A DNA stretch of 63,712 nt, the filler included, from Reticulomyxa filosa (taxonomy: Eukaryota; Protista; Foraminifera), in assembly GCA_000512085.1 (NCBI GenBank). It is 20 parts of 20 records of this genome, joined end to end, with 100 filler letters (N's around TTAATTAATTAA, not from the genome) between each part and the next. Parts side by side here need not be neighbours in the genome. Positions count along the whole stretch, not along the records: positions 32,158 to 34,756 come from ASPP01025504.1; 19 more parts are not named here. One strand, written 5' to 3'. The position numbers and the translations under genes are program-made. The notes beneath the pieces were generated by a model, which worked only from the letters and a program-made list of their open reading frames with translations, made no database searches and was not told the origin of the DNA. Below are positions 32,058 through 35,100 of the stretch, in pieces. Within the stretch, counting starts at the first letter, position 1, and every line of letters begins with the position of its first letter.

Positions 32058-32536
32058 NNNNNNNNNNNNNNNNNNNNNNNNNNNNNNNNNNNNNNNNNNN
32101 NTTAATTAATTAANNNNNNNNNNNNNNNNNNNNNNNNNNNNNNNNNNNNNNNNNNNNTTGAGAGTCTTCATTATCTGCCATCACTTACTTAAGGTTCTTT
32201 GTACTTTCCAACACAAAAAGAAAGGTTCAAGCTTGTAGCTTTCAAAGTCTTAAGAGATATATAATATATTATAATTAGCAAAAAAATCCTAATGCTTGGC
32301 CCTACTTTCATTTTTCGAAGTTTTTTTTTCCTTTTTTTTTTTTTTAGTGCGAGATATGATGTAAAGTGACTGCAATTTGGCTTGAAGGAAAAACAGAAAA
32401 AAAAAAAGAGCGATGAATCAGAAATAATTTTTTTTTAAAAAAAACAACAACGAAAGTGTACCTCTTTCATTCTCCCCACTCCTTCACATACTAACTAAAC
32501 ATAGTAATGAATAAATAAATAAATAAAAATTTGTCA

Positions 32537-33604
32537 TCACAGCTGTTTGCTGTGACTGAGTGACTTGGAAATGCGTTCCTGAAAGGTGTCACTATACGAG
32601 TTTTGCTCGATGACATCCCCCTCCAAGAAGTCGATAATGGGCATGGACTGCCTGACCATGCGTGACTCGGTGGCCATGTGATATATCTTCCACGTGAAGA
32701 TGGTTAATTGAAAGGCGATCAACACGTCAATGGTGTAATGAAACTTGACAGCGATGATCAAATACAAGGTAACGAGCGTGATCACCCACACAAAGATACT
32801 AAGAAATCTTTGAAAAGGCGTATTGTCGTGATAGTATTCAATCGTTAAAGCCAGACACGTCATCGACACCGTGTGTCCACTATAAAACACATCCGTTCGA
32901 GTGATCTTGTATCGCAAGTTCACCAGCAACGCTTCGTAAAAGATATTGCCGCTCCATTGATGCACTGGATACCCTTGATATGGATTCGGCAATTGCGTCC
33001 CCAATAAACACGACGCCCGACATAAAAACAAAAAACTATGAATCATCAAAAATCGACGCAACACAATAAACGGCTGCTTACAACACGTTATCAGCCACAC
33101 GACACTGATTCCCACTATTATGTATTGGCCCAGGTCGGGTGAGGACTTGTATTCAATTACAAACGGCGTGAATCTTTCTTTTTTTTTTTTTTAGTTGGAA
33201 TTTTTTCGTTTTTTTTAAAAAAATAATGACAATCATTACTGTGACATTTCGCAAAAGAGACACTATTTCTATGTTTGTCCATTTTCTTTAAAAAAAAAAA
33301 AAATACCTGCAAAGTCGAAACCAAAATCTGGAAGTACTATCATTGGAAGCTTCTTTTCTATTGATCTTTTTTCGGTTAACACGTTCGCAATGCACATCAA
33401 ATACGTCGAGGCCAAAAAAAAGATTATGGCTATTATCCATCTTCGCTTTTGAGAAGGACGTCGTGTAAAAATTAACAATAAAAACTGCGAACAACAAAAA
33501 CAGCAGCTCCTCCACACAAGCTCCCGATTCGGATTTAAATATGTCACATTTTCATCTACAATCTCGATATCTTTGCTTTTTACTCTGTGCAATGGTGCTG
33601 ACAT
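32537..33604 (-). CDS. Sphingomyelin/IPC synthase family (PAP2-like) membrane protein
   Basis: LPDFGFD, TQLPNP, DVFYSGHT and HYTIDV catalytic motifs, with multiple TM segments. Confidence 0.9.
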
Positions 33605-34100
33605 TAGAAAGATTGTATCTTCCCTTTTTTTGTTTATGTTTTTAAACTTTTTTTCTCTTATTTTTTTGAATCATACCAGAATTTTTTTTTCAAAAAAGTA
33701 TTGTTGGCAACGAATTCGATTGTACATTCAAATAGCAGTTACAATTTTATTTTTTCGCGATAAAAAATTTAAGTGTGGTGTTGGGGAGAACTTTTTCTTC
33801 CCTTTTTTTCTGCAGTTTCAAAGCAAGTTCGTCTCCAGTGCAGCTCCAGTGGCGAAATATCGTTAGTCCCTCGTCAATATCGCATCAAAGGAGTTGAATA
33901 AGCAAATTTGTTCTTTTTTTTTTGTTTATTGAAAGCCTAAAAGTTGGAGTTTAGAATTATCACATTAAAAAAAAAAGGAGTCGAAGACGCGTTCGTGATT
34001 GAAAGTATTGTTTCGAGTTCGGCGCATTTTAGTCATGGATCACTGTATTATTTTGGTTATGGATCTATGTATTATTTTGGTTTTGGATGTATCCTGTGGT

Positions 34101-34476
34101 GGTCGTGGTTCGATGGGTTCCTGTGTTGCATATTCCAGTATTGATGGTGTCCGGAGCCAAGTCAGCCGTTAGCGCACTACAGCGCTTACTACAGTCGCGA
34201 TTTATTCGCAGCAAAGTGCGTGCAAAAGGCGCGTCGGTGTGCTGCCGGCAAACCGAGGCCACATTATAGGTTTGCATCAAGTGCACCACCGACATACTAT
34301 TCCTTGCAGGACCGATGGTGGCGATGTCCGTCCGTGGATGGACATCAGATACAGTCTCCCTCCTTGATGTTACCGGCTGTGACCGTGTTAACATAGGGAT
34401 GAAGGAGACATTTTAAAGACATTTGCGCCTACATTCTTGGGCTGACGACGGCCGTTACGCGACATTGAACCGCACA
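34101..34476 (+). ncRNA. Candidate large structured RNA (~370 nt), family unassigned
   Basis: GC-rich island with at least 10 mutually compatible nested helices, G-U pairs favouring the + strand, and stops in all three + frames. Confidence 0.6.
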
Positions 34477-35100
34477 TTGGAGTTAGTTCTATTTATTTAA
34501 TTAATATTGGGATTTCATCTTTCTTAAATACTTGTGTTTTTTTGTAAATAGATTGGCATGGTATTATGTTAGATATTTGGTGGAGTCATTTGGCATTTTA
34601 ATGACCTTGGATTATTGTTATTATTATTATTTTTTTTAACTTATTGTTTTTTTTCCTCCCTTTTGCTCATTTTCCCCCCTTTTGTACCTTTGCTCCCGTT
34701 GCTCATTTTTCCCTCTTTGCAAATTCTTTTTACTTTCATTCGTTTCAATTTATTTTNNNNNNNNNNNNNNNNNNNNNNNNNNNNNNNNNNNNNNNNNNNN
34801 TTAATTAATTAANNNNNNNNNNNNNNNNNNNNNNNNNNNNNNNNNNNNNNNNNNNNGACAATCAAAAAACGTGTCTGTAGTATCATTATCGATTGATATT
34901 GTTGGCAGTTGTGTTATGTCAATTCTCTAATCTTCGTTTCAAAGGCACTGTTAAGTTTCAAATGTCTCTTATAGCTCCTAAAAAAAATGTTTTTGGTGTT
35001 TTTTAAAAGTTAGTTGTGCAATCCTTTTTAAAAAAAGCGAAGAGGCTCTTGTCATTCTGTATATTTCCACTTGAACTGAAAGAAAACAGAAAATAGCCCA

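What the first reader, a model, noticed from the sequence alone, without database searches (positions are those of the whole stretch)
34101..34476. Unannotated ~370-nt multi-domain structured RNA
Seen in sequence: a GC-rich island in AT-rich DNA that folds by eye into fully nested helices. These are the terminal stem GTGGTTCGATG 34105-15 / CATTGAACCGC 34463-73; GGTTCC 34116-21 / GGAGCC 34153-58; GTCAGCC 34161-67 / GGCTGAC 34440-46; and GCGCACT 34172-78 / AGTGCGT 34215-21. A multiloop closed by AGGCGC 34227-32 / GCGCCT 34425-30 carries four hairpins: GTCGGTG/CACCGAC with inner GCAAACC/GGTTTGC; TCCT/AGGA; GATGTCCGTC/GATGGACATC; and GTCTCC..TCCTT.ATGTTA / TAACATAGGGA..GGAGAC. The G-U pairs indicate the + strand. 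Inference: size and layout suit a divergent RNase P/MRP or telomerase RNA, but canonical CR-I/CR-V motifs and a TTAGGG template are absent. Loose Q/R/S-like strings (ATTCGCAGC, TGCAGGACCGATGG, AGATACAGTC) occur in group I intron order with core mismatches. It may be a new RNA class.
Basis: partly seen in the sequence, partly recalled or inferred. Interest (0 to 1): 0.8.

Follow-up and report, generated by a model that had tools for sequence, protein, structure and literature searches.

The report
Unproven structured-RNA candidate in Reticulomyxa
A 376-base GC-rich block next to a sphingomyelin-synthase gene of the foraminifer Reticulomyxa filosa does fold on paper as described. The fold is only marginally better than chance, is equally good on both strands and matches no known RNA family, so it is an untested candidate, not a demonstrated new RNA.

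Summary
The piece is R. filosa contig ASPP01025504.1, reversed. Its only annotated gene is a PAP2_C "sphingomyelin synthetase" (ETO07963.1, window 33727..32537, minus strand). The island 34101-34476 (53% GC against a 28-32% GC background) is unannotated and lies 375 nt upstream of that gene.

The whole-island z-score is -2.4 to -2.8, about the same on both strands. On the + strand the excess comes only from local hairpins (34233-34409). The long-range helices that make it "multi-domain" add no more energy than in shuffled sequences, and the terminal stem is at chance level. The strand with no local excess, the minus strand, is the one where long-range pairing beats the shuffles.

Rfam, with lax thresholds, gives no RNase P/MRP, SRP, telomerase, group I or ribozyme match, and the remembered RNase P/MRP core motifs are absent.

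The 109-codon minus-strand ORF is expected by chance (P=0.19). It shows no codon periodicity, no homologues and no predicted fold.

No relative of the island was found anywhere, and no read data could be obtained, so conservation and expression remain untested.

Verdict: the block is real, but selection for structure is unproven. Roughly 30% that it is a genuine ncRNA.

The parts
34101..34476 (.). Sharply bounded GC-rich block (53% GC) with no annotation.
   Evidence: Composition. Annotation. Fold z about -2.5 on both strands.
34105..34115 (+). 5' arm of the terminal stem. It pairs with 34463-34473: 11 bp, 2 of them G-U.
   Evidence: The duplex is not better than shuffled ends, p 0.38.
34463..34473 (+). 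3' arm of the terminal stem.
34116..34158 (+). Hairpin A (GGUUCC/GGAGCC with a weak upper part), the "P3-like" element.
   Evidence: Pair probability 0.92 for the lower stem. Energy no better than shuffles, z -0.17.
34161..34167 (+). 5' arm of the long-range 7-bp helix GUCAGCC/GGCUGAC. Its partner is 34440-34446. This is the "P4-like" element.
   Evidence: probability 0.91. No bulged U, and no CR-I or CR-V around it.
34227..34430 (+). Multiloop domain closed by AGGCGC/GCGCCU. It is the only part with clear excess stability.
   Evidence: z -4.0 on + and -3.7 on -, with boundaries taken from the fold. After correcting for the choice of window, p is about 0.1.
34233..34293 (+). Hairpin C: 7+3+7 bp with a 14-nt loop.
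   Evidence: z -2.9 on + and -1.9 on -. Pair probabilities 0.83-0.99.
34323..34346 (+). Hairpin E: 10-bp stem with a CGUG loop.
   Evidence: z -3.8 on + and -2.9 on -. Pair probability 1.0.
34354..34409 (+). Hairpin F: about 22 bp with small bulges and a 6-nt loop.
   Evidence: z -3.3 on + and -4.4 on -.
34065..34394 (-). 109-codon ORF overlapping the island, probably spurious.
   Evidence: An open frame of at least 115 codons occurs in 19% of shuffles. No codon periodicity. No Pfam family. No homologues. AlphaFold2 pLDDT 35. No GT donor in its last 90 nt.
34026..34088 (.). 24-nt tandem repeat, 2.6 copies, abutting the island.
32537..33727 (-). Neighbouring annotated gene ETO07963.1, a PAP2_C / sphingomyelin-synthase-like protein (context only).

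Best explanation
The block is a lineage-specific, non-conserved stretch of GC-rich DNA. It is most likely a decayed gene or repeat fragment, or a merely transcribed spacer, sitting in the slot upstream of the sphingomyelin-synthase gene. Three local inverted repeats (hairpins C, E and F, 34233-34409) make any transcript of either strand fold somewhat better than a shuffled sequence. The long-range helices that give the impression of a multi-domain RNA are what any 53%-GC 376-mer yields. On this reading neither the fold nor the overlapping ORF is under selection. It is not an RNase P, MRP, telomerase, SRP or group I RNA. The existence of the helices and their statistics are shown; the absence of function is inferred.
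For: - Excess stability is modest and the same on both strands: z about -2.4 to -2.8.
- On the + strand the long-range helices add nothing beyond shuffles, p 0.43.
- The terminal duplex is at chance, p 0.38, and the 5' third and 3' tail have z near 0.
- The window-selection-corrected statistic gives p about 0.1.
- The region was picked by eye from a 34.8-kb window holding many GC-rich blocks, so one block at z -2.5 is expected.
- Rfam finds nothing relevant, even at E<=10.
- No GNRA or UNCG loops appear in the predicted hairpins.
- No relative was found in metagenomes, viral contigs, prokaryotic genomes or plasmids.
- R. filosa assemblies are 30.5% repeats (PMC13746701, Table 1).
Against: - A sharply bounded 53%-GC block in 28-32%-GC DNA needs a cause. 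The neighbouring exons are only 38-45% GC. In AT-rich genomes GC islands without ORFs are a classic signature of RNA genes (general knowledge).
- The island is the only 376-nt window of the piece with z below -2.
- The three hairpins are individually strong, p<=0.01 each, though they were chosen after the fact.
- On the minus strand the long-range gain does exceed shuffles, z -2.9.
- The island sits at a gene-like spacing from its neighbour: 337-375 nt, against 355 nt between the next two genes and a published median of 426 bp.
- Copy number in the genome could not be checked.
Confidence: 0.45

Rival explanations
1. It is a genuine structured non-coding RNA gene, on either strand. It would be either a new class or a known class (RNase P/MRP, telomerase RNA, snoRNA-like) too divergent in Foraminifera for the Rfam models. 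It would act through the hairpin cluster 34233-34409.
For: - GC island without a convincing ORF in AT-rich DNA.
- z about -2.5, the only such window in the piece.
- A well-defined fold: mean probability of the MFE pairs is 0.84, and ensemble diversity is 50 against 95 in shuffles, though that difference is not significant.
- Gene-like spacing from the neighbouring gene.
- No protein signal in any frame.
Against: - No Rfam match, even at lax thresholds.
- RNase P/MRP core motifs are absent.
- Long-range architecture is at chance on the + strand.
- There is no strand asymmetry.
- TTTT runs lie inside the block on both strands, which would end Pol III transcription early.
- There is no evidence of conservation or expression.
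Confidence: 0.3
2. It is an unannotated single-exon gene on the minus strand encoding an orphan 109-aa protein (ATG 34394, stop 34065). It would be arranged in tandem with the sphingomyelin-synthase and kinesin-like genes.
For: - The ORF spans most of the island.
- It has the same orientation as both neighbouring genes. The 337-nt spacer to the next ATG resembles the 355 nt between the other two genes.
- A T-run lies about 85 nt after the stop, as it does after the synthase gene.
- Many R. filosa genes are orphans (general knowledge).
Against: - An open frame this long arises in 19% of shuffles.
- GC at codon positions 1/2/3 is 0.46/0.54/0.54, unlike the neighbouring exons, and the codon score is no better than an off-strand frame.
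- The T/R/S-rich composition is unlike R. filosa proteins.
- No Pfam family.
- No hit in the word search.
- The exhaustive search of 1.84 billion proteins gave only three repeat-inflated hits.
- AlphaFold2 pLDDT is 35.
Confidence: 0.15
3. It is a 5' leader exon or an upstream regulatory region of the sphingomyelin-synthase mRNA on the minus strand.
For: - It lies upstream on the coding strand of that gene.
- A branch-point-like ACUAAC followed by CAG at about 33813 could be an acceptor for a leader intron (inference only).
Against: - The 85%-identical paralogue contig and the related environmental transcript both end before this region, so they give no support.
- A 440-nt GC-rich leader carrying a 109-codon upstream ORF would strongly inhibit translation.
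- The spacing fits a separate unit.
Confidence: 0.07
4. It is a small non-autonomous mobile element (MITE or foldback type) whose 11-bp terminal inverted repeats are the "terminal stem".
For: - The inverted termini lie exactly at the GC boundaries.
- There are internal inverted repeats.
- The genome is repeat-rich (PMC13746701).
Against: - No target-site duplication flanks the termini.
- The terminal complementarity is at chance for these compositions.
- No second copy occurs in the held loci.
Confidence: 0.03

Closest known systems
Eukaryotic RNase P / RNase MRP RNA
   Same: Similar size (about 300-400 nt). The loose layout also agrees: a terminal stem, then a hairpin, then a long-range helix whose 5' strand is preceded by AA (AAGUC), enclosing an inner multi-hairpin domain.
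   Different: - No covariance-model hit at E<=10.
- CR-I, CR-IV, CR-V and the MRP GARAR loop are absent.
- The P4-like helix is a plain 7-bp duplex without the conserved bulged U.
- The long-range helices are no better than chance on the + strand.
Telomerase RNA
   Same: The size is compatible, and the core is closed by a long-range helix.
   Different: - No match to the Rfam telomerase families.
- No CCCUAA-type or C-rich 1.5-repeat template inside the island.
- The R. filosa telomere repeat is undescribed (PMC13746701), so a template cannot be recognised.
Group I intron
   Different: - No Intron_gpI hit.
- There is no rRNA, tRNA or organellar host gene.
- It lies in nuclear intergenic DNA.
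GC-rich ncRNA islands in AT-rich genomes (the approach of Klein, Misulovin and Eddy 2002; recalled from memory)
   Same: A GC-rich block poor in ORFs, sharply bounded in AT-rich DNA, with a negative folding z-score.
   Different: Those candidates were validated by expression and conservation. Neither is available here.

Membership tests
RNase P / RNase MRP RNA | Match to the family covariance models (Rfam RNaseP_nuc, RNase_MRP and related). | tested here: not met
   cmscan with permissive filters gave no hit at E<=1 on the piece or at E<=10 on 34060-34520.
RNase P / RNase MRP RNA | Conserved regions CR-I and CR-V forming P4 with a bulged U, plus CR-IV and the MRP GARAR loop. | tested here: not met
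   Regex scans for the motifs, recalled from memory, found none in the island on either strand. The GUCAGCC/GGCUGAC helix is fully paired.
RNase P / RNase MRP RNA | Nested P1 / P3 hairpin / P4 enclosing a specificity domain. | tested here: inconclusive
   The layout is present in the MFE fold. On the + strand the long-range helices contribute no more energy than in shuffles.
Telomerase RNA | A template of about 1.5 repeats complementary to the organism's telomere repeat. | not testable with these tools
   The telomere repeat of Foraminifera is undescribed (PMC13746701). Canonical and TnAGn-type templates are absent from the island.
Telomerase RNA | Match to the Rfam telomerase families. | tested here: not met
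Group I intron | Covariance-model match, with the P3-P9 core and the P/Q/R/S pairings. | tested here: not met
   No Intron_gpI hit at E<=10.
Group I intron | Insertion in a host gene (rRNA, tRNA or organellar) with flanking exons. | tested here: not met
   The flanks are AT-rich nuclear intergenic DNA. There is no rRNA or tRNA in the piece.
SRP RNA and other Rfam classes (snRNA, snoRNA, self-cleaving ribozymes) | Covariance-model match. | tested here: not met
   Only two chance-level hits to bacterial leader families, both mainly in AT-rich flanks.
Protein-coding exon | An open frame longer than chance, codon periodicity, and homologues or a predicted fold. | tested here: not met
   ORF P=0.19. 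No periodicity. No Pfam family in any open segment. No homologues. pLDDT 35.

The most novel reading that the evidence does not exclude
The block is the gene for a new, foraminifer-specific structured RNA of about 380 nt. Alternatively it is the first, extremely divergent rhizarian RNase P/MRP or telomerase RNA. Its functional core would be the three-hairpin domain 34233-34409.
Probability: 0.2. Interest if true: 0.65.

Novelty: not a real feature. Interest (0 to 1): 0.22.

Why it matters
Essentially nothing is known about non-coding RNAs in Foraminifera. Their RNase P/MRP and telomerase RNAs and even their telomere repeats are undescribed. A validated 380-nt structured RNA would be a useful entry point. 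As it stands, the case rests on a single-sequence fold whose significance does not survive correction for selection. It should be treated as a low-priority candidate until expression and conservation are checked.

Tried and rejected
- Rfam at two sensitivities: nothing relevant.
- tRNA/tmRNA scan: none.
- Minus-strand ORF as a conserved exon. Pfam, word search and the exhaustive search were run. The three hits are long repeat proteins whose scores are summed over near-identical repeats. The single-unit score of about 32 bits is insignificant at database scale. AlphaFold2 pLDDT is 35. Rejected.
- Other open segments on both strands: Pfam and a word search for + 34145-34393. Nothing.
- Relatives of the island through degenerate back-translated patterns in two frames: JGI metagenomes, IMG/VR, GTDB genomes. 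blastn against plasmids. Nothing.
- Paralogue route. R. filosa contigs ASPP01040796 and ASPP01019108 and a JGI transcript carry related synthase genes, but all end before the island.
- CpG-island idea: CpG observed/expected is about 1.1-1.4 through most of the piece, island included, dropping to 0.4-0.5 only in the two AT-rich ends. Rejected.
- G-U strand argument: rejected.
- Spliced + strand coding models need GC-rich introns unlike the real 28%-GC intron. Rejected by inspection.
- snR30/U17 m1-like AUAUUCC at 34130 and a B-box-like GGTTCGA at 34108: isolated strings in the wrong context. Treated as chance.
- The Glöckner 2014 genome paper is not held in the library.

Full report
**Identity and context.**
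- The 2599-base piece is identical to the reverse complement of Reticulomyxa filosa contig ASPP01025504.1 in GCA_000512085.1.
- Its one annotated gene is ETO07963.1, "sphingomyelin synthetase", 358 aa. It carries a PAP2_C domain and occupies window 33727..32537 on the minus strand.
- At the left edge, the first eight codons of a second minus-strand gene run off the contig (32181..32158). On the paralogous contig L001 the matching gene gives a weak, sub-threshold hit to the Pfam kinesin motor domain.
- The island 34101-34476 is in no annotated feature. It starts 375 nt upstream of the synthase start codon and ends 280 nt before the contig end.
- The published median intergenic distance for this assembly is 426 bp, and repeats make up 30.5% (PMC13746701, Table 1). 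The island therefore sits where a neighbouring unit would be expected.

**The observation.**
- The island is 53% GC, against 28-32% in its flanks and 38-45% in the synthase exons.
- The ViennaRNA MFE fold (-137.4 kcal/mol) reproduces the terminal stem, the first hairpin, both long-range helices and the four hairpins of the multiloop. Pair probabilities are 0.72-1.0.

**Is it more than chance?**
- Against dinucleotide shuffles the whole island gives z -2.35 to -2.67 on the + strand and -2.28 to -2.76 on the - strand.
- Eight other 376-nt windows of the piece give z between -1.5 and +3.6.
- Splitting the signal by region:
  - The 5' 126 nt and the 3' 67 nt have z near 0.
  - Hairpin A has z -0.2.
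  - The excess lies in 34227-34430, carried by hairpins C, E and F.
- Those boundaries were taken from the fold. Asking instead for the best 204-nt window in each shuffle gives p about 0.1 on either strand.
- With pairing limited to a span of 70 nt, the + strand keeps z -2.1. The extra energy from long-range helices is -17.9 kcal/mol against -17.3 in shuffles, p 0.43.
- The terminal duplex is matched by 38% of shuffled end pairs.
- The multi-domain, fully nested architecture, which is the heart of the finding, is therefore what any 376-mer of this composition yields on the + strand. What is unusual is a cluster of three local inverted repeats.
- On the minus strand the pattern is reversed: local z -0.6, long-range gain z -2.9. 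That is one nominally significant result among six statistics.
- Ensemble diversity is lower than in shuffles, but not significantly.
- The region was chosen by eye out of 34.8 kb holding many GC-rich blocks. One block at z -2.5 is about what the null predicts.

**Strand.**
- The + fold has 10 G-U pairs and the - fold has 14. Both strands show the same excess over their own shuffles.

**Known RNA families.**
- cmscan against Rfam 15 with permissive filters returns nothing in the island at E<=1.
- On a 461-nt slice at E<=10 it returns only a bacterial S15-leader match, most of it in the AT-rich flank.
- RNase P, MRP, SRP, telomerase, group I and the self-cleaving ribozymes all fail.
- Regex scans for CR-I, CR-V, CR-IV, the MRP GARAR loop and canonical or TnAGn-type telomere templates find none in the island (patterns recalled from memory).
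- The P4-like helix is preceded by AAGUC, but it is a plain 7-bp duplex without the bulged U.
- The telomere repeat of Foraminifera is undescribed, so the telomerase reading cannot be excluded on template grounds.

**Coding potential.**
- The only sizeable ORF is on the minus strand, 34394..34065 (109 aa; open for 115 codons).
- Shuffled islands between the real flanks reach at least 115 open codons in 19% of trials.
- GC at codon positions 1/2/3 is 0.46/0.54/0.54, against 0.40/0.34/0.60 in the synthase exon. A codon-usage score trained on the synthase does not separate its frame from a + strand frame.
- There is no GT in the last 90 nt of the ORF, so it cannot be an upstream exon spliced to the synthase.
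- Homology and fold tests for this ORF:
  - Pfam finds nothing.
  - The word search finds nothing.
  - The exhaustive scan of 1.84 billion representatives yields three long repeat proteins. Their E-values come from summing near-identical repeats.
  - AlphaFold2 gives pLDDT 35.
- All three + strand frames contain stops. Their open segments have no Pfam family or word-search hits.
An orphan gene cannot be excluded in a lineage rich in orphans.

**Comparative and expression evidence.** None could be obtained.
- Two paralogous R. filosa contigs (79-85% nucleotide identity over the synthase gene) and a related JGI transcript all end before the island.
- Degenerate-pattern scans in two frames of the JGI metagenomes found no relative. 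These metagenomes do hold Reticulomyxa-like synthase transcripts.
- IMG/VR, GTDB genomes and blastn against plasmids also found no relative.

**Reading.** I put the probabilities as follows:
- About 45%: a non-selected GC-rich fragment whose hairpins are incidental.
- About 30%: a genuine structured ncRNA of unknown or very divergent class.
- About 15%: an orphan minus-strand protein gene.
- The remainder: a leader of the synthase mRNA or a small mobile element.

The island's sharp GC boundaries and gene-like spacing keep the RNA-gene reading alive. The strand symmetry, the chance-level long-range helices and the absence of any family signature keep it from being the favoured one.

Noticed in passing
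window 32158-32181 (minus strand): An ATG at 32181 opens a reading frame (MADNEDSQ...) that runs off the contig end. It matches the start of the 110-aa gene called on paralogous contig L001 (1034-1366). That gene gives a weak, sub-threshold Pfam kinesin-motor hit and has the KVAVRIRP motif. So a probable kinesin-like gene lies 355 nt downstream of the synthase gene.
   Followed up: partly
window 33162-33269 (minus strand): Residues 131-166 of the annotated protein ETO07963.1 are translated from the AT-rich stretch that looks like the intron. The paralogue ETO00524.1 and the JGI transcript protein P0006 instead continue with a TPF..EYK..PD.GQY segment, encoded at about 33178-33116. The deposited gene model therefore probably mis-places this intron.
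   Followed up: partly
window 34026-34088 and 34651-34709: Two short tandem arrays flank the island. One is a 24-nt unit in 2.6 copies directly against its left edge. The other is a 19-nt pyrimidine-rich unit in 3.2 copies, 175 nt to the right.
   Followed up: no
window 33796-33809 and 33618-33631 (minus strand): The 14-nt purine motif AAAAAAAGGGAAGA occurs twice on the minus strand, each time shortly upstream of a candidate start codon of the synthase gene (33727 and 33604). Looser copies lie at 34664-34683. It may be a leader or promoter motif, or just low complexity.
   Followed up: no
L003 (JGI sample 3300010878, contig Ga0136899_10060904): An intron-less environmental contig encodes a synthase 76% identical to the window's. 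A Reticulomyxa-like organism is therefore present in that JGI sample, which could be mined for homologues of R. filosa non-coding regions.
   Followed up: partly
window 33820-33846 (minus strand): A nine-residue echo (ELHWRRTCF) of the exon-encoded ELVWRSCCF lies upstream of the annotated start. This hints at a small local duplication of part of the first coding exon.
   Followed up: no
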